From Setoptus koraiensis (taxonomy: Eukaryota > Animalia > Arthropoda): a stretch of DNA of 64,000 nt. The notes beneath the pieces were generated by a model that worked only from the letters and a program-made list of their open reading frames with translations, did not search any database and was not told the origin of the DNA. How positions within the stretch are numbered: position 1 is the stretch's first letter; each line of letters opens with the position of its first letter. The position numbers were made by a program, and so were the translations under genes. The stretch covers positions 17,546,001 to 17,610,000 of the forward strand of contig CM106586.1 of the NCBI GenBank assembly GCA_048013815.1. The letters run 5' to 3'. This document shows, piece after piece, positions 1,486 to 44,269 of the stretch.

Positions 1486-4400
1486 ATGGAAACTGACCTA
1501 GATGAACAACACGACACAATAATTGAGAGTGGGCAACATTATTTTTCCTCCTTAGCGTCAAATCTAGATGACTCAATGCGTGCCAATAACCCCTCAGAAT
1601 GTTCCAGATCTGTGACAATCAACACAATGGACGATTGCTCTGCCACTACCAAATCCACCGTCACTAATTACCGCTCCGATTCCTCAATAGGGGCACCATA
1701 CTCATCGACAGCCACAGGTATCAGTGGCACAAGTAGTCTGAGGCCGACGACAACAAGTTGCGAAAATAACGCCGCCAGTGGAACATTTGCTGCCACTTCT
1801 GATAAAAATCAAAAAATTAAACTGGAACAACAAGTGTCGAACGAGACAAACACTAAACAGGCCACAACAGGCTTCAAGTCGTTGACGTTGCTGAGAAATA
1901 TTGTCAAGCGAGCAAGTTTCAGGCGCTCCTCAACTAGTTCATCGAGCCAGCAGCGACAACAGCAACAATCTAATTTGTCCACCAACGACGAGTCATCTTC
2001 GTTGGTGACAGCATCATCGAGGGATTGTTCCAGATCGATGGCTTCGTTGCAGTTGCCGTCGCCAGAGGAGAAGCTCGTCCAATTGAGTGACCAATTCAAG
2101 CCGAAATTCGTGCCCATTGACGTGGACACAATGTTCATGCGTTGCAATAGTTCTCGGCGCTCACTCCTACATGTAAGATGACGTCTAAATATATCTTGAC
2201 TATCTACCAAATTGCTTTTATTGCTATTGCTGATCATTATCATTGCTAATTAATCTATTCCTTTCAATTCTTTTCTGTTGTCTGACAACAACAGGCCGAT
2301 TTCAAGATTAAGCGATCTAAATCGCAGGCGTCCGATCATTCGTGCAATGACAGGAGTCACAGGAATTCAAGCAGACGACAATCGAAAAGAGACAACAAAA
2401 TTAATTTCGACGATTCAAGGCACCAGCTATCTAGTCACAGGAATAGAGGCAGTCAAGTGGCTTGGCAGACTTTGAACAGATTGAAGATGTCAAAGAGTGA
2501 GCACAGAGTCAATGAAGTGTCTGTGCAGACAGACTTTCAATCAAATGGAAATAATGCAACAATAACAGATAGTGAAAAGAATGTCTCTGATAGTCGAGTG
2601 AAGGAAGACGATAATTCGACAAGAATAGATAGAAATCGTCGTCCTGCTTCAGTTGCCAATTGTAATATCATTGTAAGAGAGCACTCGTCAACACAATATG
2701 ACAACAACGAGAATCAACAGAAACAGCCAAAACAACAACAATTTAACACTGCCGATGCCAACACCAATGAAGGAGAAGCAGACATCAATGATGCAGGCAA
2801 CTCCTCTAGTGGTAATTGGAGCGAATCTAGTCCGACAACGTCAGAGAGCGATCGTATAAAGCGACAACAAAAAATTGACACTATTAATCAAGAGAATGAC
2901 AACAACAACAAAATTGTGATAAAAAATAGCAAAGCATCGGCGACAACTAAAACTATTCACTCATTGCCTGATGATGATCTGGATAAGAGCCAGTCGACAG
3001 GAGGATACAACAATCATGCCAATTATAACAAGGACAAACAAAATACTGATGCTATGTCGTCAGAATTCAATAAAAGGTGCACCAGTGTTCGGACTAACGG
3101 AAAATCGCACCATCACGACATCACTGCCAGTAGACATGGCCACACCAAACACAGTCCAACAAATGTTGGTCATAACACAACAAAGAGAGCGTCGACTAAC
3201 AGCAACAGACAGGCCAATCGTAATGCTAATCAATCACAGCCATCAGGTAGAGGTCCGCAAAGCTATTCAACGAGAGTTTCGCCATCTTCAAAACAACCGA
3301 TACACATCATACCATTGGTGCCTGCGCCGCCCACCGATGATGAGGAGGCCTCATCTGTGTATTCTTGCGACACTGACGGATTTTACACCTCTATGCACAC
3401 TGATTGCGGATTGTACAGGTTGTGCAATGAAACCACCGACGGAATTAATGAGGAAGAGGACGAAAATAGTGAAATCTACAAGGGTATGTTCAACGACATG
3501 ATGGAGGCCAAGCAAGAAGCGCAACAACAAAATCACAACGACAAACAATCGTCACCTGCCATAAGCGGACTTCATACTAATCGTATAGTCAAGAAGACAT
3601 CGCCACCTCATAGGCGCCAGTATGAAGATCATTCTGGCGCTGTTTTGCAAGCCTCGGGCAGCAACATATTGGACAAGGGAAGTCTTGAGATGTATTCGTC
3701 AACTAGTACCCTTGAGGAGAACAAATTTTCACCTGGCGACAATAGTAGCAAGTGTTCGCCTGACAACAGCGCATCAATACAACAGAACGGCAAAAAAGTG
3801 GCAAAACCTCCACCGCCGCCACCGCCACAGAGAAAAGACAGTCTCAGTTCGGATACTCGCGAGGTGCTACTACAAATCTATATGCAAATGAGAAATTTGT
3901 CTCGACTGGATCCGGATCAGATTCGTCTCAATGACAAAATTATCAAAGACGCAATGGATGAGGAACACAAGGTAGCAATGAACACACGAAGATACTCAAC
4001 AGGTTACAATCAATCGTCAGCGCCCAGTTCCATTTATGACAATCACCTAGGCGATCAGCAGGAAAGTATGTCATGTGACACCAATCATGGTGCTAATAAT
4101 CAGCCCGCTCTCAGGAGTTCATCGCAATGCTCATCGAGTTGTGTAGCACCATCCACCATTATGGATTCGCCCTCGCCATCAGCCGGTATAGCCAGCTCGT
4201 CGATGCGATCCGTTATAAACGATCTCAAGCTCAGCTCAATGGAGGCACTCACCTCAATGCCCAGCGACTCAAATGAGAGTCTCATGATGCGCCAACACAA
4301 ACAACATGAAACAAATAGCAGTATTTGTGATGATGATGAGCTCGATAATGATCGATCTCATTATTTGTCATTAAAACCGCAAATAGAAACACAAAATGCA

Positions 4401-6011
4401 ACTAGTGACAAAAACTGTAAGCAATTGCCGACTGCTGCCAATAATTGCAATCTGTCTACACTTAAAAGACGCTCAGCGAAACTGCCGTCAATACTCGATC
4501 AGCGGCCATCTCTTATCATGAGGAAGGATCATGATGTAAGTGACGACAAATCCAACGACAATAATGCACACACAACAGGCATTAAAAAAGGAGAGCATGT
4601 CAAGATCGCCTACAAAGATATTGAGAAGCGCAAAAATACATTGAAGGCAATGCTAAAATCTCTAACGAATCGCACTGTCAGCTTCCGATCAAAGACAATG
4701 AAACAAACACCATTATCCGATGATTTGACTGCAACGCAACACGAAGCACATGAGAAAAACGACGAAGATGAATCATCTAAGCCAACTGAATCTAATCAAA
4801 AAGAACAAGATGCGACAACTACGGCCAAACTGACAGAAGATGAAAAGCCCCCAGAGAAGCAGGTAGAGTCAGTTCATTTGAGAATAGAATCACCGACCGA
4901 AGCTCTAAACGGATTGTCAGAGGAAACAATTGAAAACATCGTTATTGACGTGGACAAAGAGAAAGAAGATGAGAGGGAAGAATCAGTGTTCGATGAAGCC
5001 AAGCTGAACGAATGTAAAATGCGAATGCTTTACCCAATATCGAGGTATCAACCTAACTCGACGCCAAATAAGACATCCCCAGATAGTAGTCAAAATTTTA
5101 GACGTCAGTCCAATGCTAGCCAATATGAGAATGAAATATCTAATGGAGTTAGCCCCGGCGCTGCGCCCACACTTCAATCAAACGATGATGATTTCTGCAA
5201 TTCAAATACAGAGCTTGATCCAATTGATCTATTCAACTCATGGCAAGCCAATAGGAGTGGTCATGGTCGTGATCCTGCTTCAGTTCGGACAAGACTGTCA
5301 TCGGGATCACTTGCCGATTTAGGCTTGGCACGCAATAGAAACAGTTGGTCAGGAGGATCGTCCCCATCGCCTTGTTCGTCATCGCCAACCACTGGGCCCT
5401 CTTCGTCTCCTATGTCACCTCATGTAACGGCAGCCTCTATAATGAAGCAAAGTCCTCTGAATGAATTGCATAGTGATGCAACAGGCTCTAGTGTCGCCAA
5501 ATCAAAACTACAACAATCAAACTTGAATGGTTCAATACCAGATATAGACAATTACATTGATGACGAGGACGACGACAAGGAAGAGCATTGCGTTAATTCA
5601 AATGGCGTTGCTGAACGCGGGGAACGATATAATCAACTATCGTCGGTGGACAGGGACGACACCAACCATCTTACTAATGGCATCGTCAATCTTGCCTTCA
5701 ATTCTAATTTCATCGACGAGGAGGAGGAGGAAGAAGAACAAGAACAACAGCAACAAGTTTCTTGCATCACAAAAGACAATTCCCCATCGTTTCATCAGTC
5801 TAAACAAATAAGAGATTACGCTAGCCTGTCGTTAAAGAATTGCAACTCATTCCAAGGCAATCTAACAAAGAAACCTAATTGTCGCAAAGGGATAAATATC
5901 AATGGTACTAGCATGTTTGCGCCCTCATGCGAACCAATATCCGAAGAGGATCCAGAGGAATCCTCAGATAATAATACTGGTAGTAACAACGGAAACAGAC
6001 AATCGCTTTAG
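1486..6011 (+). CDS. gukh: Nance-Horan syndrome / GUK-holder-like protein; join(1486..2172,2295..6011), 5' end uncertain
   Basis: Exon A contains LPSPEEK...FVPIDVDTMFMRCNSSRRSLLH. Donor GTAAGA at 2173 and acceptor CAG at 2292-2294 are both phase 0, giving RRSLLH|ADFKIKR. The large exon contains the NHS-family motif DTDGFYTSMHTDCGL and a PPPPPPP tract. The frame is open from 1294; ATG 1486 has gccATGG context. An upstream exon is possible. Confidence 0.8.
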
Positions 6012-21850: not shown

Positions 21851-24800
21851 ATGGCGGCCAGCGGCATGTGCACAGGTGATTTGAGCCGACAAAATGCAAC
21901 TGCCATCAACTGTCTCATACTACTAATGATCGGCCTGCTTGCGCTGCCCGCAAACACAAGCGGCACCGCAACAACAACAGCAACCAGCGGCCAACAGCAT
22001 CACAACAGCAAAATAGTGAGTATTACAGTAACTCAATTATCTCTTAATTAAGCGCTCGCTATAATAGCTCGCTCTCGAGCTTAATTAATTGGCATTAATT
22101 AGGCGGCCATTATTCAGTCAACGTGCTCGTCGTTGTGTGACGGCTGCTCGCGCGCCACACTCACCACAAGTTGCCACTCACAAGTTGCCACTCACAAGTT
22201 GAGAGTGAGTCTGTGTGTGTCCAAATGTCCACTTCCGGCCCGCAGACGCGCAAACAACAGACGCGTCCTGTTTGCTTTGTTTGCTTGACCGGCTTGACGC
22301 ACCGCCGACCGCTGCGTCCGTTACGGGCTGACCGCCTGCGTCTCCCGTCGGCGGGCACCCACATGCTAACCGTTGACCGCAAAATGAACTCTGTTGCAGC
22401 CTCGCGCAACCAGCCACAAAGCAACCACAAAACAATAGATAACATTGCTAACAAACTCGTGTACTCACACTCTTAACCCGCCATTCGCCTGCCAGGTCAA
22501 ACGGTTTGCCATAGCGTCAGTGCTGAACCCGAGCGCCGTCGCCGGAAACAGCGGCGTCCGACTATTTCCGGGCCCGAGACGCGCACTAATAGGCAATGTG
22601 GCCCGCTACGCATCGGCGGCCAGCTCGCTGATACCAATGAGAAGCGCCAGTGATAGTTACGCAACTAGACGCTCATCGTCGTCATCGTCGTCATCGTCCT
22701 TTGCTGACATGCCCCAATATGACGCAATCAGGCACCCGTCGCCCCATCAGCTGTTGCCAGCAGCCGTACCGGTGGCCGTACCGCGCCACCCCGTCAATGG
22801 GGCGGTGGCTAGCGCAAGCGCAAGCGAGGATATATCAATCAGGCGCTCGTATCAATCGGACGCGGTGGGCGCCGCCAGCGCTCAAGACAACGCCGCCGAT
22901 ATCCCATTTCCGGTTGCCTATCAGCAACCACAACAGCAGCAGCCGCAGCAGCAGTCTTACCAGAAGCCAAAGACGCTCGACAGTTACGACAGGCCGGCCA
23001 CGCTGTCGCCCCTGTTGTTGGGCCAGTCGAGCAGCACCAACCCGCAATTGCAGCACTACCTCATGAGGCAGCAGCAACAACAGCAACAGAAGCAGCAGCC
23101 CCAATTCACCGCAACTACCCGACATCCGCAACACATGGCCGCGTACCAGCAGCAACAGTCGACCACTCGGGCCGGCTACGACCAGATACCCGCACCGAAG
23201 CAGCATCCGCAGCAGGGCAACGAGTTGAGTGACTACGCGGGCAATTACAACGTCGATCAACAGTTGCAGCAGCTACAAACCAGAAAACCAATGGCACCCT
23301 CGCCCGTGGCCAGTCTCACCTATCAGCAGCGCAACCACGAGGCGGCGCCACCCGCAGACATGAGCAGCGTTGAGCCGTCGCTGGGCCCCACATATCCGGT
23401 GGAGCAGCCGCAACAGGCTACAAGTCCTATCCAATTAGCTCCTAAGAACGCCAGACAGCAACTGGAGTCGGCCCACACGAATCAGTTCGAGCGACGATCA
23501 CTAGTGCCATCATATCAACAACAACAACAACCATCCGCTGTGCCAACTATCTACGGCCGACAACAGCAGCAGCCGGCGCAACAATTGTCCAATTATCAGT
23601 CGGACGAGCAGTCGGACTATTCGCCGTCGGGCAGCCCGCACTTGCACGCCAACAGCGAGCCGGCCATCAACGGGCCGGCCCGTAGCTCGAGCCGGTACGC
23701 ACCGCAACCGCAAGACAATTCCTATTCGGGGTCCCAGCAGGACGGCGGCGCCACCGGCGACAACTCCGCCGGGCCCAGCGGGTACAGCGGCAAGGCCCAG
23801 GAGGGCCAATCGAGCGGGCCGACGGCCACGGGCGAGAGCGCCGACGAGAGCGCCGAACAAACTGAGGCCCAACAGAACAAGCCGGACAAATTGGCGCTGC
23901 TACTCATGAATTCAAAGTTTGTTTGTACGGGCCGCAAGGATGGCTACTACGCGGACAACAGCGTCCAATGTCAGGCCTTCCACTATTGCGTCAGCGGCGC
24001 CAAGCACTCATGGATGTGCCCCGAGGGCACCGTCTTCCACCAGGTCCACCTCAACTGTGTGCCCGCCAGCCAGGACATTTGCGACCAATCGGAGAAGTAC
24101 CACATGGTCAACGACTACCTCTACAAGGTGAGTGGGCCCCGCGCTGTTTATGCCCGGCCGTTTATGCCCTGCCGTTTATACCCGGCCGTTCAGACCCGGC
24201 CGTTTATGCCCTGCCGTTTATACCCGGCCGTTCAGACCCGGCCGTATATCCGGCTGTCTGTGTCCGCTCGTTCGCGCAACTTGTTCACTAATCTCTTGTC
24301 CGATCCTCTTGTCTATACCCGTCCGATCCATTTGTTTGTAACCGTCCGCGCCGCCCCGCGCAGCCCATGGACTCGAACGGGCCCAACGCCACCGTGCGCT
24401 ACCATCAGCGCTACTACCCCGAGGAGTTCACCTACGGCATGCCCAGCTCGGGCGGCGAGCCCAGCGGCGGCGAGTCGCAGCCCCCGCAATCGGCCGCCTC
24501 CTACAACGACGACGCCGGCAACACCAGCGGCAACCAGGATCAGCAACCGGCCGGCCCGTACAGGCCCGTTCCGGTGCCCTACCCGACGGGCCCCAAACAG
24601 CTGACCCGTCCGTCCGCAAATCACAATGCCTATGCCTCTCGCGCTCAGCAGTCCGACAGCGGGGTGCCCCAATACGGCGCCGCCGCCGGCGGCGGCCAGC
24701 GAAACAACGCCCAAATGTATCCGCCCAGCAACTCTTACGGACCGGGCAGCACGGCAAGCTACAATGACAACAACAACAACAATGCCGACTCAAGCTCCTC

Positions 24801-32424: not shown

Positions 32425-32771
32425 TAAATACTAATAAATGCTATTACCGGTATGTCTTTACGCGGCTCGATTCGCTTGTTCTAATGGCAACAGACAAGAC
32501 CACTAACAGAACAGTTACTTAAAAAAAATTGTTTATTTTTTACTTTCAGATGGATTCGATCAATCAAACCGTCCATCTAAGAATGACTGTAAAATTATAT
32601 AATCATCTATTTTCTGGTTGAGATTTTAACATAGAGCCTATTATGCGTACATTGGTTTGCATATATGCAGTGCCATTGATGGGTAGCTTCATAAAGATTA
32701 AACAAGTTTACCAATTGTAGATTCAATTGTGCTAATTCATAATAGATCGTTTTTGTTAGTATCGTAAATCA

Positions 32772-35075
32772 TCATTCCATATATTCGGGAAACATATTAT
32801 CGTGCAAGTGCTTATCTCTAGTGTGCTTGATTAGTTTTTCTCGCCTCTTATAAGAGACGTTACAAATTTCACAAGAGAATATGGGGCCTTGCACATGTTG
32901 CTCTTTCAAGTGGCGCGACATGGATTTCCTTGTTTTATATAGATTCTTGCAGATGGCACATTTAAAGACATTAGTATCCTTGTGATAGCACATAGTGAGG
33001 AATTTTTGTGTATCAATTAATGGGGAGCCAGTTAATTCTTGTCTAGGTTGTTGTATAGCATCTCCATTTACGCCATCTTCATGGGCATCGGGCTTTGACG
33101 AACCGTTTGTATTATTACCACCACCCACAATGATTGCCTCATCAGTAATCATTGTCTGCTCAAGTAAGTTAGACGGGTCAAAGTCGACTAAATCGGAGTT
33201 ATTTAATTCGTCTTCTAGTTCAGTTTGGTCTCTACTGATAGCATCATCACTTTCGTTATGAGAATCATTATTTGAAACACCATTTTGAGTGACATCATCA
33301 TGTCTAGTTGTTTGATTAGTACCGGTCGAGAATTGATCAGTATTAAGTTTTATAATTCTTGCGTTATTCGACAAGTTGATTAATCGTTTTTGGTTCACAA
33401 AAGTAGGTCTCTTATCGTCGGAAGATGATATCTTATCGCGGCTTAATAAAATACTGGTGCCGACCTGATTCGAAAGCCTATTCTGATGGGCCGTAACAGA
33501 GTTGCTAGATGATGTCTTTGGTTTTATACTAATTGAATGGTTCAGTCCAAGAGACGACCTATTATTGCGAAGCGAAGGTATTGTAATAGATAAAGATTTA
33601 ACTGTAGAGAATTGGGGTGCAGAATATCCGGTACTTTGGGGCATAGGAGAACTTCCAATTTCGTCAGTGAGCTCATCAGATCCGTCCGGATTTGACTTTC
33701 TGCGCTTCTTTCTCGATAGGTTTGAGTCAAAATAATCAACTTGAGGCAGATCAATTTTTGGTCGGACTGGTTGGATAGTTATATTAATTTGTTTACTTTT
33801 GTCCTGCGAAGCACTGGTCCCATTGCATGCTTCTATCTGTGTCTCCAATGGGACAAAAGTGAGATTGGGACTGTTGTCAGATGAAGGCTTATCTTGTTGG
33901 CAGCAAATTTCTTTTATGATATCGATGAGCTTGCCAACTATTGTATCTACAGATGCCATTGCACCCATTCCTATATCACCACAAGCTAACTTTTTCGCAA
34001 TACAATCGATTTTCGCGTAACCGAAAGACTGAAGTTTGGCGATATGTTCTCTCGTGAGTGGATGCTCATACATGTGGACGTTCATTGCAGGACAGAATAT
34101 TAAAGGTTTGGAAGTGTCCCAAGCTCTGGCGGTGCAAGTCAATAAATTATCGCAGATTCCGTTGGCCAATTTGCCCATAGTATTGGCATCTAGAGGCGCT
34201 ATCAAGAAAACATCAGCCCATTTCCTTAACTCAATGTGCAAGATATCATCGCCCATCTTATTCCAAGTGTTCCATTCTTCTTTATCGTCATGCACTTTGA
34301 TGTTGTCATTGAAGGTTTTGACAATTTTATCTACAGCGGTGAAATGTTTGGCATTCTCAGTCATTACTACTCTAATGTCAATACTGACCGATACAGAGCG
34401 TCCAGACGAAGTTGAGATTGTCTGAGGAAAGTGACTTCTTAATGTTTCTATCAATTCAATAAGTTTCACTGTGGCTACACTACCCGTGGCTGCGATGAGC
34501 ATGTTTAATTGTCGTGAGACAGGAATCTCAGATTGTCGGTTTAGGCAGTCCTCTTTTGTGTTAGAATGTTCAAAATGATGTTTCAGAGTTTCACCATTAA
34601 TTGGGGCAACAGTTGAGTTCTTGGTTGTTCCAGTGGCATTGTGACATTTAATATTTGTGTCAAGAGGTAGAGAAATCTTAACACTATTCGATACACTATT
34701 TGATTTGCTACTCTCAGACACTCGCTCAGAAGATGGTCCGCTCTCGTCTGGACAGTCATCAATCATTTGTTCCGCTAGTCTAGAGTTGTTTGCGACAGGT
34801 GAGGGCTTCGAACTGGAATGTTTGGTTTCGGCGGCAGAAACTGTTTCCGCTGCTCTGCTTCCTCTATTCCTAGATCTCGTCTCTCTTGTAGGCGGTGGGG
34901 ATACAAATTTTTCTTTTTCCCTGGGAACTTTCTCGCTGTCGTCTTTGGCTCGTGATTGTGTCTCCTTGAGTCTAGCATCTCTTCTGGATACTCTTGTATT
35001 TGTGGCAATGTTGCTGCTATTACACTCTTGCTCCGTCCTGGAGTCGTGCTCGGTCCGCATATTTCTTGTTCGCAT
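32772..35075 (-). CDS. PPCDC: Phosphopantothenoylcysteine decarboxylase (HFCD flavoprotein) with long N/C extensions and two C-terminal C2H2 zinc fingers
   Basis: The domain spans about 33915-34510: LIAATGSVA, ILHIELRKWAD (catalytic His), APLDANTMGKLANGICDNLLTC, PAMN, KKLACGDIGMGAMASV (catalytic Cys). The C-terminus has CAICKNLYKTRKSMSRHLKEQH and CEICNVSYKRREKLIKHTRDKH. It is a single open frame; the first ATG is at 35075 (the ORF track uses TTG 35132). Confidence 0.9.
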   Translation of the reverse strand: MRTRNMRTEHDSRTEQECNSSNIATNTRVSRRDARLKETQSRAKDDSEKVPREKEKFVSPPPTRETRSRNRGSRAAETVSAAETKHSSSKPSPVANNSRLAEQMIDDCPDESGPSSERVSESSKSNSVSNSVKISLPLDTNIKCHNATGTTKNSTVAPINGETLKHHFEHSNTKEDCLNRQSEIPVSRQLNMLIAATGSVATVKLIELIETLRSHFPQTISTSSGRSVSVSIDIRVVMTENAKHFTAVDKIVKTFNDNIKVHDDKEEWNTWNKMGDDILHIELRKWADVFLIAPLDANTMGKLANGICDNLLTCTARAWDTSKPLIFCPAMNVHMYEHPLTREHIAKLQSFGYAKIDCIAKKLACGDIGMGAMASVDTIVGKLIDIIKEICCQQDKPSSDNSPNLTFVPLETQIEACNGTSASQDKSKQINITIQPVRPKIDLPQVDYFDSNLSRKKRRKSNPDGSDELTDEIGSSPMPQSTGYSAPQFSTVKSLSITIPSLRNNRSSLGLNHSISIKPKTSSSNSVTAHQNRLSNQVGTSILLSRDKISSSDDKRPTFVNQKRLINLSNNARIIKLNTDQFSTGTNQTTRHDDVTQNGVSNNDSHNESDDAISRDQTELEDELNNSDLVDFDPSNLLEQTMITDEAIIVGGGNNTNGSSKPDAHEDGVNGDAIQQPRQELTGSPLIDTQKFLTMCYHKDTNVFKCAICKNLYKTRKSMSRHLKEQHVQGPIFSCEICNVSYKRREKLIKHTRDKHLHDNMFPEYME

Positions 35076-36081
35076 CTTGTCTGTGCTGAAGACTTGAGCG
35101 AGTTCAGATTCAGGAGATGTAATTAATGACAAATTTCTCAGACAAATAGAGTAAGCTCAAAAAGGCAATGGTAACTATCTGATGCTGCCGTGCAATCGAA
35201 CGACGAGTAAAGACACTGAAAGGCGACCAAAATACAATCCATAGGTAAAGATGGGACCGACGTTTGAATAGTACAATAAATAATAAATAGTAATAATTTG
35301 ATGAAAGTTGCTGGTGAGCTTTTGATAGCACTGAAATCAGCACTGTGTTCAGATATTTTGTTGGGCTTCTGGGGCGTGTAATCTGAAGAATTCATCACAT
35401 CAAAGAACAAGAACGGATTGGGAGCGAAACATATGATTTGTTGAATTGCATTGTTGCATGTAAAATATGAATGAGAATTCTGTGCGGGAGCTGAATCTGC
35501 AGTTTACAAGCAGTTTGATGAAATGACGCTCATACTAGCGGATGCTATTTTCTTCAATGTTTGTTGATCCGGGTGATTTTTTATCTGATATTTTGTCTCA
35601 TTGGTTGGCCCGACTATAGCTGACAAATATACATCCAGATACACAAGTTTGTTGGAGCAAATAGGCCAAAACATCTCGGCAAATCAAGCCAGTGGTAGGG
35701 CTGCAGATAAAAAGAGTGTTGCTAAACTAAACTGCAGTTTACTAGCGTGCAAGCTGTGGTCTGCAGTCTGATCAGGCCTTCATCTGCAGTTCGGTATTAC
35801 CGTTGGTATATTTGGCGGGCATGTTTGTTGTGTGTGTGTGTGTTTGTACGTGCGTCTGTATTATTTTTATTAACTGGAGTTGCGTTAGTTGAGTTGTTGT
35901 TTTCATTACGTTCATTTGAAATGAATCACTTCCATATCCCTCAAAATCCAACACAAATCTTGACCCACAATTATTTTATTTATTTATTACCAAGCTGGAT
36001 AATTCACGAGATACATTGAACGAAATTTATTAGATTGACTCGTTTATCTTTGTTGTTTGTTTCAAATCACACACAACAAAC

Positions 36082-40132: not shown

Positions 40133-43100
40133 TTACACTGAGATAGAGTCTTCGCATTCGCTATCTACCTGTTCAACATTGTTTTGAGTATGGTCATCTT
40201 GTGTTTTAGACTGTGTGGTTTGTGATGACGGCGACACCATTATTAGCTGATGAATATCGTTGACCTTCCTCTCGAGATCTACCAATTTCTTTTGTAGGTC
40301 CTTACTAAAATTCAATAGTCTTACACAATTGTGATGATGTCTCCTATAGGATTTGTTTTTAATTTCACAGCGTGTCAATCTGTTGCGTGTCCTGGTCAAT
40401 TGTCTGCCACTAATCAATAATTTATTTGTTAAATCATCCACTTTTAGTTTCATCTGATTCAATTCGCTTTTATGTTGCTCATCAGAACACTTAATTCCCT
40501 GCTTAAGCATATTGTATGATATCTCCAAGCAATCATAATTTGAATAGGAATCTCTCAATTGTTTAGTGAGCGACTTCATATTGGTCTCGGCCACATTGAG
40601 TCGCTGTCTCAATTGTTGCGTAGCCTCACCTGTCGTCGACGACTCGCCACCAATGATCAGTTGCGATTTTGGAGGCTTGCGGTCGCTGTCATCAAGTTGT
40701 TGCTGTTGTTGCTGCTGGTCGCCTGTTGCGCACTCGGGTTCCACCACTATCACCTGAGGCGTGTGAGGGCGCCCCTTGAGTTGCTCCTTCAGCATGTCGA
40801 TGACCGTTTGTTGCCTGTTGAGGCGATCTTTCAACTGATAAAACTCAATCTGACGCTGCTCCTCCAGCGACTCAACCATTAGTTTGGCCTCCTTCTCGTC
40901 GACAAGCATCAGCTTGCTACTGTGATGATCCACAAGGTGCTCTTCTTCGTCGTCGTCGTCGTCCGATTCGCAATGCTCTTGCTGGTCGCCCTTGGCTTGT
41001 GTCGGCACGTCTTCGAAATTCTCGCCCAACAAATCGTCTTTCGGCAGCGCGCCCGACGAGGCGAGCTTGTCAGAGGCGCCGTCGTCGAGCTCATCGTCTT
41101 TTTGGTCGTGTGTCGGTTGACCGTTGGTCGGGGCTGCTGTTTGTTCTGCTGTCTTGGTCAGTCCTAAATAGGGGCCAGTGAGTTCGAGACTGGCGAGAAT
41201 CTGTTTCGTTTGTTCGCTCAAGTCCATGGAGATGGCCGCTCTCAATCGAGCGTCGGTGGTTGTTGTTGTTGTTGTTGTCTGTTGCTCATTGACGTTGTTG
41301 TCCGTGTCGATTGGAGTTGCTGGCGAACAGGTGGTTTGCTGCTGTTGGTCGCCACGAATTGAGTTGCTAGTGTTGCTGTTGTCATCACAAAAAGTATTTG
41401 TTTGGTCTGATTTGTGCAAGTCAACTAAATCATGCAAACAATTAACAATGTCATCACTAGTCACCACTGGCGCCGCTGGCGCCGTTGCATGGTCGTTGGC
41501 TGTATCACCTGTGAGCTTGTTGTAAATGTTGTCTGTCAGCAAGTGATGCAACGGATGCTTGCTTGCGTCGTCGGGCTCTTCATCGTCGGAACACGATTCG
41601 GCCTCTGACTCGGACGAGCTAGTGGCCGAGGAAACTGACGACGACTCGGACGAGCAAGAGGCCGACGACTCGGACGACTCGCATGACTCGGACGACTCGG
41701 ACGACGACGAAGAAGAGGAACTCAGATCGAAAGTAACCCTTTTCTTGTCCTTCAACACCAACGAGCAAGCCTCGTGTTGCTGCTGCTGCTGCCGCCGTTG
41801 CCCATTATGTAACGGATGGAGATCTGACGAGCACGACGACGAGGACAAACAACATGCTGTTGCGTTAACTATGGCAGGCTTAATGGACTTGACAGCGGGC
41901 GCCAAGGTGAATGTGAGATTGATAGTGGGCGACTGGCATCGGGGCTGCTCGTCTAGTCGATCTGTGGTTGTTGTTGTTGTTGTTGTGGTCGTTTTAACTT
42001 GCGACTGATCACTGACAGTGTCCAGTCTGCCAACCAGACTCCTGACACTTGTCAACTTGTCACTGTTGTTGTGACTGTACAAATGAACGGAAGTCTCCCT
42101 GATGGTGGCCGTGGCGAGCGCCACCTCGGCCGCGGCCGCCGTCGTCGATTCGAGCGCCGTCGCCGCAGCCACACACGATCTTACGCAATAATCGTCGTCT
42201 TGCTGTTGTTGTTTTTCACGGTCACCTGTCAGTGCAGTTTTTTCTATCACACGCTGCTGTCCGCCGTGAGTGTCGTCGTCGTCGTGGTCGCCGCTGACCG
42301 CTGGCCGAGCTTGCTGCAGCCTGATCGCAGCATCACTGGTAATAGTAGTTGCGGCAACACCATCGTCATCACGCTGCACCAACCTGTGGCGCTCGTCAGC
42401 GTCACCTTGGCCGTCGTTGTCGTCATCACAATCGCGGGCACCGTCATGGAGCGCGTCGTTGTCGTCATTGTGGTTGTCGTCGTAATCGGTGTCTCGCTTG
42501 TCATGATTGTCGTTGTGTCGAGCGTCGCTAGCAGCATCGATAGCTGTTGATAATTTGATCATTTGCTCACCGTTTTTGCCGCTGCCGCTGCTGTTGTTGT
42601 TGTTGTTGCTGTTGTTGTCGTTGCTGTTGTTGCTGTTGTTGTTGTTGAATTGACTAGATTTGCTACAACTAATGGGCAACTTGTGAATATCACGCTCGCC
42701 GCCGTGACACCTAGAGCCCACGGGCACCGCACTAATTGCGTTGCCCAGCGCGGGGGCGTGTGCGTGTACGGGCATCAGTCGGGTGCAGGCCAGCGGTGGA
42801 CTTATGCAAGAGCGGGCTTCCTGACCGACGGAACAAACGGAGCTGGCATTGCTGCTGCTGTTGCTTATGTTGTCGTCGCTGGTATTAATAGATGACGACG
42901 ACGACAATTGCAACGACAACGACCTGTTGTTGTTGGTTACGGCGGTGCTAGTGGGGCTGCTCCTGATGCCGGTCGTTGTCGTTGTTGTTGTTGTTGTTGT
43001 TGTGGCCGTTTTGTTATTGTTGCTGTTGGCTGTTGTGGCCGCAACAGCGACAGGTGATTTTCTGTCTCTCGAATATGGGCCATAATGAGGGCTTGCGTAG

Positions 43101-44269
43101 TGATGAGCGGGCGGCGTCACTGTCGCGCTAGAATATTGATGGCCATCAGCTGGCATTGACAGTGACGTGGCCGCGGCCGTTGCTGTTGTTGTTGTTGCTG
43201 TGGACGATGTGTCGAAGCCAATTATGGTGGAATCACTGACGGAGTTGTGCAATCTGATTTTGCGCAAAGTGACAGTTAAATTGTCCAAATAGGATAGGTC
43301 AGTAGTGTGGTGCAGCTGCTGTTTGCTGCTGATGTTTTGCTTGCCATTTAGGTTGCTGTTCAGGTTGCCATTTAGGTTACCGTTGAGGTTGCTGTTAGTG
43401 TTGCCGTTGGCGCTGTTGGCGCTGTTGTTGTTGTTGTTGTTAGTATGTTGCGGTGGCGCTGACGCAATCAGTGGGCCGTTCGAGGTTGGCGAGCTCTTGG
43501 CCGACGACGCGTTGCTGGCGCTGTTGATGGATATACCGTCGTCGTCTTGTTCCGCCGAGGTGCTCTCGAGAATGGCCTCCAACCATTGGCTTCGGTCCAT
43601 CAGGGACGAGGCGGCCAGCACGTGATGTTCGCCGTTCCACATCTAGCGATCATCGTTTGGCAAAATTTTGCAAAATTGGCAATGTCAACAGAGAAAAATA
43701 TCAACGGTCAGTATCAACAAGTGTGTGTAATCGTGAATATCGCTCAATAGTGGCCATAATTTGTCAAGAGATTAGACGCGCCGTAATTGGCCGTGGCTTA
43801 ATTGGCATAATTGGCATAATTGGCATAATTGGCATGATTGATTGTGCACAATCGATTCGAATCAGCTCAACTGGGCCTAATTCAATTATGGCCACTCAAT
43901 TGTGTGACTCACAACCTGTGAGAGGGCACATAACGGTTGTGCGACTGGTGCGCTTGCCATGTCCAGACAGACAAACAATGGCCAAACAACAACAACAACA
44001 ACATCGATTGATGCTCTCATTGTTGTGTATCGATGAGGGACGCACCGCACAACAACGACAGGTGAGGGCGACACAGGCCGAAATTGGGCCAGTGGTCACT
44101 CGAGCGCTGGCTGGCTAGCTGGTCAGCGTTGGCCGGCCAGCCTCGGCCGCCAACATCGGCCGGCGACGAGATATTTCTCGCAACTGCTGCCGCATTTCGC
44201 AACTGCAATATCAATTACGTAAGCAAACAAATGGAGGTCAATTTGTTGTCGGTGTCCATTGTTGTTGCC

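What the first reader, a model, noticed from the sequence alone, without database searches (positions are those of the whole stretch)
32772..35075. CoA-biosynthesis enzyme PPCDC fused to an NLS-like motif and two C2H2 zinc fingers in one exon
Seen: one uninterrupted frame holds about 190 aa of disordered N-terminus, a full PPCDC domain, the basic motif SRKKRRKS, an acidic linker (DFDPSNLLEQTM) and two tandem C2H2 fingers, so this is not a gene-model merge. Established: animal PPCDC is normally a stand-alone homotrimeric FMN enzyme of about 200 aa that needs the His in LHI(D/E)LR, the Asn of PxMN and the Cys of CGDxGxG; all are kept here. Fungal Hal3/Vhs3 relatives moonlight through extensions, but those are not DNA-binding fingers. 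Inference: this could be a nuclear, trimerised DNA-binding protein (six fingers per trimer) that links FMN/CoA-pathway state to transcription or supplies CoA locally at chromatin.
Basis: partly seen in the sequence, partly recalled or inferred. Interest (0 to 1): 0.82.

Follow-up and report, generated by a model that had tools for sequence, protein, structure and literature searches.

The report
Mite PPCDC enzyme with zinc-finger tail
In gall-mite-type (eriophyoid) mites, the gene for a coenzyme A synthesis enzyme (PPCDC) also encodes, in the same reading frame, a very strongly conserved pair of DNA-binding-type zinc fingers, so a housekeeping enzyme has probably gained a second, gene-regulator-like job that nobody has described or tested.

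Summary
Window 32772-35075 (minus strand) is one open frame of 767 aa. It holds a disordered N-terminus, a complete PPCDC domain with all catalytic residues, a disordered linker with a basic KKRRK patch, an acidic motif and two C2H2 fingers.

It is not an assembly or gene-model artefact. At least 24 divergent homologs carry the same architecture in one ORF, including a UniRef entry from the eriophyoid mite Aceria tosichella. The fingers are better conserved (87% and 74% mean pairwise identity) than the enzyme domain (67%). Their recognition-helix positions are almost invariant.

A profile of the tail searched against 1.84 billion proteins matched over its full length only PPCDC fusions, so no stand-alone ancestor was found. 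Sarcoptes, Leptotrombidium, Dinothrombium, scorpion, horseshoe crabs and insects have ordinary PPCDCs of about 190-220 aa. The fusion is therefore specific to the eriophoid-type clade.

Inside that clade several species have lost the fingers, one of them at the orthologous locus. The tail is therefore an accessory module, not an essential one.

The most likely reading is an active trimeric PPCDC that also binds nucleic acid through a transcription-factor-like tail. DNA binding, nuclear localisation and any coupling to CoA metabolism remain untested. I class it as a new variant of a known kind, of moderate to high interest.

The parts
32772..35075 (-). Complete single-exon CDS, 767 aa plus stop, of the PPCDC-zinc-finger fusion gene
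   Evidence: The ATG at 35075 matches the conserved MKTRNQ start of the homologs.
34518..35075 (-). N-terminal disordered extension (aa 1-186) with short conserved motifs (MRTRN, PTR, ISLP)
   Evidence: AF2 pLDDT below 45. Motifs are shared with the long homologs. Mean pairwise identity is 23%.
33915..34517 (-). PPCDC (Flavoprotein, PF02441) domain, aa 187-387, with a clade-specific insert after the first helix
   Evidence: It is 53-59% identical to animal PPCDCs.
34224..34241 (-). LHIELR motif holding the catalytic His280
   Evidence: Invariant in 24 sequences; located.
34080..34091 (-). PAMN motif holding Asn332
   Evidence: Invariant; located.
33963..33983 (-). CGDIGMG substrate-clamp motif holding the catalytic Cys365
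   Evidence: Invariant C, G, D, G, G; located.
33186..33914 (-). Disordered, fast-evolving linker (aa 388-630), net charge about +7 in its first 213 aa
   Evidence: pLDDT below 45. Mean identity is 27%, and the distance from the end of the PPCDC domain to the acidic motif ranges from about 30 to over 240 aa among homologs.
33693..33716 (-). Basic cluster SRKKRRKS, a candidate monopartite nuclear localisation signal
   Evidence: Similar KRRK, KRRRK, RKRRK or KRKRR clusters occur in the linker of 5 of the 22 finger-bearing hits listed, by a run-of-four-basic-residues search, with further KR-rich sites at that alignment position. The Aceria-type proteins lack them.
33138..33185 (-). Conserved acidic/hydrophobic motif DFDPSxLLEQ(S/T)MITD(D/E), inside a net -17 region
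   Evidence: D633 is invariant and P, L, E, Q are at least 90% conserved. Mean identity is 62%. The motif is kept as the very C-terminus of the finger-less P0023 in L011.
32988..33023 (-). Pre-finger helix (PLIDTQKFLTMC; family consensus PLFNTSKFLxLC)
   Evidence: Helix with pLDDT above 90. It is family-specific and absent from non-fusion zinc-finger hits.
32895..32960 (-). C2H2 finger 1 (C-x2-C-x12-H-x4-H)
   Evidence: Mean pairwise identity is 87%. Helix positions -1/2/3/6 are N/K/S/R in 20-22 of 22 sequences (the window itself has T at -1).
32808..32873 (-). C2H2 finger 2 (C-x2-C-x12-H-x4-H), joined to finger 1 by a 7-residue linker
   Evidence: Mean identity is 74%. Helix positions -1/2/3/6 are R/E/K/K in 20-22 of 22 sequences.
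32532..32537 (-). AATAAA, a candidate polyadenylation signal about 235 nt after the stop codon
   Evidence: Read directly from the sequence. No expression data were available.

Best explanation
This is the mite's PPCDC gene, the third step of CoA synthesis, and probably its only copy. In the stem of the sampled eriophyoid-type clade it acquired a C-terminal module laid out like a transcription factor.

The layout is: disordered N-terminus; PPCDC core (FMN enzyme and trimerisation unit); long disordered linker with a basic patch; short acidic/hydrophobic motif; pre-finger helix; two classical C2H2 fingers.

I think the protein is made as one chain. It keeps decarboxylase activity as a homotrimer and uses the three flexible two-finger tails to bind a conserved nucleic-acid target. 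That target is most likely a short DNA site, with binding strengthened by trimer avidity. The acidic motif would serve as an effector or partner-binding (activation-like) element.

Shown: one conserved frame, intact catalytic residues, purifying selection on the fingers, clade restriction, and secondary losses.

Inferred: trimer formation, nuclear location, DNA binding, and any coupling to CoA or pantothenate metabolism.

Sub-claims: real translated fusion with an active PPCDC and a functional finger module, about 0.9; nucleic-acid binding, about 0.6; sequence-specific transcriptional regulator, about 0.4.
For: One frame:
- (P about 5e-9 that the linker stays open by chance).
- The same architecture sits in a single ORF in 22 hits of 446-902 aa, plus P0166 and P0167. 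Linker length and sequence are highly variable, yet the frame is always kept.
- Single-exon genes are the rule in eriophyoids: 75-84% of genes (PMC7738191; bioRxiv 10.64898/2026.08.24.746826).

Enzyme:
- E 1.7e-57 to human PPCDC.
- The catalytic His, Asn and Cys are invariant.
- Finger-less orthologs occupy the same UBR1-ATG5-PPCDC-WTAP locus. The fused gene is therefore the ortholog of the housekeeping gene, not a side copy.

Fingers:
- Mean pairwise identity is 87% and 74%, against 67% for the enzyme domain.
- Recognition-helix positions are nearly invariant.
- Canonical hydrophobic core and a 7-residue inter-finger spacing.
- AF2 pLDDT 82-95.
- The best sequence and fold matches are DNA-bound tandem fingers: Aart, HIC2, CTCF, ADR1, Tramtrack.

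The full tail occurs only in these fusions among 1.84 billion representative proteins.
Against: - No expression, localisation or binding data exist for any member.
- Two fingers alone usually bind DNA weakly.
- Both fingers have H-x4-H spacing, and the linker is not TGEKP-like. Fingers of this kind can also bind protein or RNA.
- The basic patch is not conserved in the Aceria-type members.
- At least four species with checked contigs have lost the whole tail, and one has lost only the fingers. The tail function is therefore dispensable and is not tightly tied to the essential enzyme.
- The finger-less P0023 keeps the acidic motif, which shows that this motif can work without DNA binding.
- I could not scan the rest of the window's genome for a second PPCDC.
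Confidence: 0.5

Rival explanations
1. The fingers are a protein- or RNA-binding module. It docks or regulates the enzyme by recruiting a partner, by higher-order assembly as with the Ikaros C-terminal dimerisation fingers, or by binding RNA. It is not a DNA-binding transcription factor domain.
For: Both fingers have H-x4-H spacing and the linker is not TGEKP-like. Pfam hits lean towards atypical finger families such as ZHX, ZNF451 and ZNF462. Ikaros and Aiolos appear among the PDB hits. Only two fingers are present. The acidic motif persists without the fingers in P0023, which suggests a partner-binding tail.
Against: The best-scoring PDB matches are DNA-bound fingers. The invariant basic residues sit at the base-contacting positions -1, 2, 3 and 6. 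CTCF fingers with H-x4-H spacing bind DNA (alignment).
Confidence: 0.22
2. The fusion is a neutral by-product of genome compaction. A small zinc-finger gene next to PPCDC lost its intergenic spacer and was read through. The two halves work independently, with no functional coupling.
For: Eriophyoid genomes are extremely compact, with tiny intergenic regions (PMC7738191). Earlier notes of this scan list several chimeric genes in this same genome (not checked here). The tail was lost repeatedly while the enzyme stayed. The linker is unconstrained.
Against: No stand-alone gene with this tail was found in any genome, including tail-less relatives. The fusion has persisted across lineages whose SMC2 proteins are only about 60% identical. 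The acidic motif and pre-finger helix are conserved as part of the joint architecture.
Confidence: 0.18
3. The two domains are not made as one protein. Either transcripts terminate or are spliced before the fingers, or an internal promoter and start codon give a separate finger protein.
For: No transcript data could be checked here. The linker is AT-rich, so cryptic poly(A) signals are possible.
Against: The frame is maintained across 30 to over 240 unconstrained linker codons in 24 or more species. The chance P is about 5e-9 in the window alone. The candidate internal Met in the acidic motif is Leu in six homologs.
Confidence: 0.05
4. The PPCDC core is a catalytically idle scaffold, used only as a trimerisation domain for a zinc-finger factor, and a separate short PPCDC elsewhere in the genome does the enzymatic work.
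For: Yeast Hal3 and Vhs3 show that PPCDC cores can be recruited for non-enzymatic roles (PMC9604783). The rest of this genome could not be searched.
Against: His, Asn and Cys and the whole substrate clamp are invariant. In the domain tree the fused and finger-less forms intermingle in one clade, and they share one syntenic locus. None of the samples I looked up yielded both forms.
Confidence: 0.05

Closest known systems
Animal and plant stand-alone PPCDC (human PPCDC, PDB 1QZU; Arabidopsis AtHAL3a, 1E20/1MVL)
   Same: The core domain is 53-59% identical to animal PPCDCs. The FMN-binding fold, catalytic His/Asn/Cys and substrate clamp are the same. A homotrimer with active sites at protomer interfaces is expected (PMC9604783).
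   Different: The known enzymes are about 190-220 aa with no extensions. Here there are 186 extra N-terminal residues and about 380 extra C-terminal residues including two zinc fingers.
Fungal Hal3/Vhs3/Cab3 moonlighting PPCDC subunits
   Same: [quoted passage not shown]
   Different: The fungal tails are long poly-acidic stretches that regulate the fungus-specific phosphatase Ppz1. Hal3 and Cab3 have each lost one catalytic residue and form heterotrimers. The mite protein keeps all catalytic residues and ends in C2H2 fingers.
Other PPCDC gene fusions: Schizosaccharomyces Hal3-thymidylate synthase, bacterial CoaBC (Dfp), Rhizoctonia PPCDC-DUF3605
   Same: PPCDC tolerates C-terminal fusion partners. 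These fusions appear (P0029, PF02441+PF00303; P0027 and others; 6TGV CoaBC). See also Molero et al. 2013, cited in PMC9604783.
   Different: Those partners are enzymes or domains of unknown function, not nucleic-acid-binding fingers.
Two-finger C2H2 DNA-binding domains (Tramtrack 2DRP, ADR1 2ADR) and CTCF/HIC2-type tandem fingers
   Same: Tandem beta-beta-alpha fingers with a 7-residue spacing and basic recognition helices. Like Tramtrack and ADR1, the module has an N-terminal accessory element before finger 1.
   Different: There is no orthology, only generic finger similarity. H-x4-H spacing occurs in both fingers. The module is attached to a metabolic enzyme.
Bacterial enzyme-repressors (BirA, PutA, NadR); background knowledge, not tested here
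   Same: The same concept: a pathway enzyme carries a DNA-binding domain and can tie gene expression to metabolite state.
   Different: These are prokaryotic, use winged-helix or ribbon-helix-helix domains, and are unrelated in sequence. Such coupling is only a hypothesis for the mite protein.

Membership tests
PPCDC (HFCD flavoprotein family, EC 4.1.1.36) | Flavoprotein (PF02441) domain with full-length similarity to solved PPCDCs | tested here: met
   PF02441 at E 1.1e-30, covering profile positions 2-160 of 162. 1QZU at E 1.7e-57.
PPCDC (HFCD flavoprotein family, EC 4.1.1.36) | Catalytic His (LHIxLR), Asn (PxMN) and Cys in the ACGDxGxGAM substrate clamp | tested here: met
   H280, N332 and C365 are present and invariant in 24 sequences.
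PPCDC (HFCD flavoprotein family, EC 4.1.1.36) | FMN binding, homotrimer formation, decarboxylase activity | not testable with these tools
   Inferred only from sequence conservation. Needs expression, size-exclusion chromatography and a complementation assay.
Classical C2H2 (Krueppel-type) zinc-finger DNA-binding domain | C-x2-4-C-x12-H-x3-5-H with the conserved aromatic and Leu/Met core, folded as beta-beta-alpha | tested here: met
   PF00096 and PF13894 hits in 20-22 of 22 tails. The pattern is present in both fingers. AF2 pLDDT 82-95 with a beta-beta-alpha fold.
Classical C2H2 (Krueppel-type) zinc-finger DNA-binding domain | TGEKP-type inter-finger linker | tested here: inconclusive
   The length is canonical (7 residues between the last His and the next Cys), but the sequence is VQGNI(F/Y)x, not TGEKPYx.
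Classical C2H2 (Krueppel-type) zinc-finger DNA-binding domain | Sequence-specific DNA binding | not testable with these tools
   Only indirect support: invariant basic residues at helix positions -1, 2, 3 and 6, and best matches to DNA-bound fingers.
Hal3/Vhs3-type moonlighting PPCDC | Disordered N-terminal extension plus acidic C-terminal tail around the PPCDC core | tested here: inconclusive
   The N-terminal disordered region is present. There is an acidic region (net -17 over 84 aa) with a short conserved motif, but it is not a terminal poly-acidic tail and is followed by fingers.
Hal3/Vhs3-type moonlighting PPCDC | Loss of one catalytic residue, a heterotrimer with Cab3, and inhibition of Ppz1 | tested here: not met
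   All catalytic residues are retained. Ppz phosphatases are restricted to fungi (PMC6695811). This protein is not a member of the family, only an analogy to it.

The most novel reading that the evidence does not exclude
The PPCDC trimer is a metabolite-sensing transcription factor. Occupancy of the FMN/phosphopantothenoylcysteine site, or the trimer-monomer equilibrium, would control how the three zinc-finger tails engage a conserved DNA site. This would set expression of CoA/pantothenate pathway genes, possibly including the horizontally acquired pantothenate-synthesis genes of eriophyoids. It would be an animal counterpart of bacterial enzyme-repressors such as BirA and PutA.
Probability: 0.12. 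Interest if true: 0.85.

Novelty: new variant of a known kind. Interest (0 to 1): 0.58.

Why it matters
PPCDC is an essential and normally minimal housekeeping enzyme. A form that has carried a highly conserved zinc-finger module throughout the diversification of the eriophyoid-type mites sampled here would be a rare animal case of a primary-metabolism enzyme fused to a transcription-factor-like DNA-binding unit.

Nature has also supplied controls. Related species have lost only the fingers, or the whole tail, at the same locus.

It adds a third kind of PPCDC moonlighting extension, beside fungal Hal3/Vhs3 and the fission-yeast thymidylate synthase fusion.

It also sits in a lineage that has remodelled pantothenate/CoA metabolism in other ways. 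Eriophyoids acquired pantothenate-synthesis genes by horizontal transfer (PMC7738191), and an earlier, unchecked scan note reports a PPCS chimera in this genome.

Eriophyoids are major crop pests and virus vectors, so a lineage-specific variant of an essential enzyme may also have practical interest.

Tried and rejected
- Gene-model merge or chance ORF: rejected.
- Stand-alone ancestor of the tail: the exhaustive tail-profile search found none. All non-fusion hits match only generic fingers and lack the pre-finger and acidic motifs.
- Short PPCDC hits P0046-P0052 as 'exon 1' of intron-split fusions: rejected for the four whose contigs were fetched (P0046, P0048, P0050, P0052). tblastn found no tail downstream, and neighbouring genes start 27-830 nt after the stop.
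- SPATA46 (Pfam Spt46) relationship: only 1 of 22 tails hits it, and below the curated cutoff, so I treated it as finger noise.
- Single loss of the fingers: the maximum-likelihood tree needs 6 changes. Forcing the five finger-less forms with fetched contigs (P0023, P0046, P0048, P0050, P0052) into one clade costs 28.7 lnL, but AU p = 0.076, so a single loss is not formally rejected.
- The window's own protein is not on record in the contig collection.
- Literature: no paper links PPCDC with zinc fingers. The supplements of the Aculops genome paper do not mention PPCDC.
- I could not confirm whether the Aceria tosichella UniRef entry derives from a transcriptome, which would prove a single mRNA.
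- Fold search of the tail gave only weak, non-significant matches (best E 2.8e-3), as expected for such a small module.
Full report
**1. Observation**

One search lists a single ORF on the minus strand, 32772..35132. The first ATG is at 35075 and gives a 767-aa product starting MRTRN. I use this start because the homologs begin MKTRNQ or MRTRNQ.

- Pfam finds a full Flavoprotein/PPCDC domain (PF02441, E 1.1e-30) and two C2H2 fingers at the extreme C-terminus.
- The best solved-structure match is human PPCDC 1QZU (E 1.7e-57), followed by Arabidopsis AtHAL3a.
- The 297 codons between the enzyme and the pre-finger region would stay open by chance with P about 5e-9. The other five frames carry 17-89 stops.
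- AlphaFold2 with the family alignment gives a confident PPCDC core (pLDDT 73-89) and a confident finger module with a preceding helix (82-95). The N-terminal 180 residues and the linker at 398-685 are disordered, below 45.

**2. What organism**

The window is a compact, intron-poor animal genome. For example, a 1183-aa SMC2 sits in one ORF next door. That SMC2 is 57-64% identical to about 27 unnamed proteins from run assemblies and metagenomes, and 60% identical to Aceria tosichella. The next named hits are only 46-47% identical (Oppiella, Dinothrombium, Oppia).

In the PPCDC-domain tree the window groups with the Aceria-containing clade (support 96/84). Earlier notes of this scan also call the genome eriophyoid-type. 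Published eriophyoid genomes have 75-84% single-exon genes (PMC7738191; bioRxiv 10.64898/2026.08.24.746826). A single-exon 767-aa gene is therefore normal here.

**3. The fusion is conserved**

A length-matched search returned 22 proteins of 446-902 aa, P0001-P0022. Each has a PPCDC core followed by the same two fingers. One of them is UniRef A0A6G1SB49, annotated only as 'Phosphopantothenoylcysteine decarboxylase' of Aceria tosichella. P0166 and P0167 add two more.

Where contigs were fetched, the whole protein is one ORF (L001, L002, L003, L004).

The alignment shows a modular design:
- the MKTRNQ start and a few short motifs in a variable N-terminal extension;
- the PPCDC core, with a clade-specific insert;
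- a motif PLLNQQPTYPI just after the core, which is weak in the window;
- a variable linker, spanning about 30 to over 240 aa between the core and the acidic motif;
- the acidic motif DFDPSxLLEQ(S/T)MITDD;
- a spacer;
- the pre-finger helix PLFNTSKFLxLC;
- the two fingers.

Mean pairwise identities:

| Region | Identity |
|---|---|
| N-terminus | 23% |
| PPCDC core | 67% |
| Linker | 27% |
| Acidic motif | 62% |
| Pre-finger helix | 62% |
| Finger 1 | 87% |
| Finger 2 | 74% |

The fingers are under stronger constraint than the enzyme. Helix positions -1/2/3/6 are N/K/S/R in finger 1 and R/E/K/K in finger 2, in 20-22 of 22 sequences (the window has T at -1 of finger 1).

**4. Distribution**

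A profile of the tail (alignment A2) was searched against 1.84 billion representative proteins. Only 10 representatives matched over the full length, and all are PPCDC fusions. Every other hit is a multi-finger protein matching the finger part alone. No stand-alone version of the tail is known.

Searching with the PPCDC core alone shows ordinary proteins of about 190-220 aa in Sarcoptes, Leptotrombidium, Dinothrombium, Centruroides, Limulus, Tachypleus, insects, molluscs and fish. The fusion is therefore confined to the eriophyoid-type clade.

**5. Secondary losses**

The closest short hits, P0046-P0052 (209-321 aa), fall inside the fusion clade.

- L005 (P0052) has the same UBR1-ATG5-PPCDC-WTAP-G-alpha neighbourhood as the fused genes in L001 and L002/L003. 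L011 shares the ATG5-PPCDC-WTAP core of that neighbourhood. In L005 the PPCDC stops after 253 aa, and WTAP begins 45 nt later.
- L009/L010 (P0048) sits in a supported clade with the Aceria-type fused proteins. L006/L007 (P0050) and L008 (P0046) are further cases. All of these lack any tail by tblastn.
- L011 (P0023) keeps the linker and ends exactly after the acidic motif, with no fingers downstream.

On the maximum-likelihood tree the presence or absence of fingers changes 6 times. A single-loss topology is 28.7 lnL worse, but it is not formally rejected (AU p = 0.076). The two different truncation points argue for at least two separate events.

The finger module is therefore selected where it is present, but it is dispensable.

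**6. How it most likely works**

Established knowledge: PPCDC is a homotrimer with active sites at protomer interfaces, using His, Asn and Cys (PMC9604783). All three residues are invariant here, and the fused gene is the positional ortholog of the tail-less enzyme. I therefore infer an active trimeric PPCDC.

The tail has the order of parts typical of a transcription factor: an oligomerisation unit, a flexible linker with a basic patch, a short acidic/hydrophobic motif, and a DNA-binding-type finger pair. From memory, the acidic motif resembles acidic activation motifs such as the DFDLDML core of VP16. That is a lead, not a test.

The nearest solved relatives of the fingers are DNA-bound tandem fingers (Aart, HIC2, CTCF, ADR1, Tramtrack). 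Tethering three two-finger units to one trimer would give avidity for repeated short sites.

My probabilities:
- real translated fusion with an active enzyme and a functional finger module, about 0.9;
- nucleic-acid binding, about 0.6;
- transcriptional regulator, about 0.4;
- metabolite-coupled regulator of CoA/pantothenate genes, about 0.12.

Local CoA supply at chromatin is unlikely, because PPCDC is a mid-pathway step.

**7. Rivals**

- Protein- or RNA-binding fingers. H-x4-H spacing, a non-TGEKP linker and ZHX/ZNF451/ZNF462-like Pfam hits point this way.
- A neutral read-through fusion produced by genome compaction.
- Separate products from one locus.
- A catalytically idle scaffold with another PPCDC elsewhere.

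The last two are disfavoured by frame conservation across unconstrained linkers, invariant catalytic residues and shared synteny. None of the four is excluded by experiment.

**8. Comparison with the known, and novelty**

The protein is a member of the PPCDC family (features tested and met) and carries classical-type C2H2 fingers. It is not a Hal3/Vhs3-type protein, because it retains all catalytic residues and the Ppz target exists only in fungi. It is only a convergent analogue: a disordered N-terminus, then the core, then an acidic element.

Other PPCDC fusions exist, such as fission-yeast Hal3-thymidylate synthase, bacterial CoaBC and Rhizoctonia PPCDC-DUF3605. None is to a nucleic-acid-binding module.

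Full-text searches found no paper on a PPCDC-zinc-finger protein. The architecture exists in UniRef, but only under a plain enzyme name.

Verdict: a new variant of a known kind, real and conserved, with its function untested.

**9. Limits**

- Most homologs come from unnamed run assemblies, so species names and the exact age of the fusion are unknown.
- The rest of the window's genome could not be searched for a second PPCDC.
- No expression data were available.

Noticed in passing
window 1-64000: Strong compositional mosaic. Blocks at about 10-26 kb and 40-64 kb have 48-59% GC. The 26-40 kb block, which holds the F-box gene, the PPCDC-finger gene and SMC2, has 36-41% GC.
   Followed up: no
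window 2457-6011 (+) and 40133-43642 (-): Two very long uninterrupted ORFs (1184 and 1169 aa) have no Pfam match at E <= 0.001. They may be lineage-specific or highly disordered proteins.
   Followed up: no
L001, L002/L003, L005, L011: The microsynteny (UBR1)-ATG5-PPCDC-WTAP is conserved across several eriophyoid-type contigs, and L001, L002/L003 and L005 also carry G-alpha beside it, although eriophyoid gene order is reported as poorly conserved. The window's copy lies in a different neighbourhood, between an F-box gene and SMC2.
   Followed up: partly
L011 6323-7636: A natural truncation variant. The PPCDC protein keeps the N-terminal extension, the linker and the acidic motif, then stops immediately after that motif. 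An SDF2/MIR-like ORF follows where the fingers would be.
   Followed up: partly
Eriophyoids also carry horizontally acquired pantothenate-synthesis genes (PMC7738191). Several steps of this pathway therefore seem remodelled in the lineage. I did not verify this.
   Followed up: no
window 22445-24604 (+): A 719-aa ORF in the GC-rich block has a single chitin-binding peritrophin-A domain (CBM_14, E 1e-10) near its C-terminal third.
   Followed up: no
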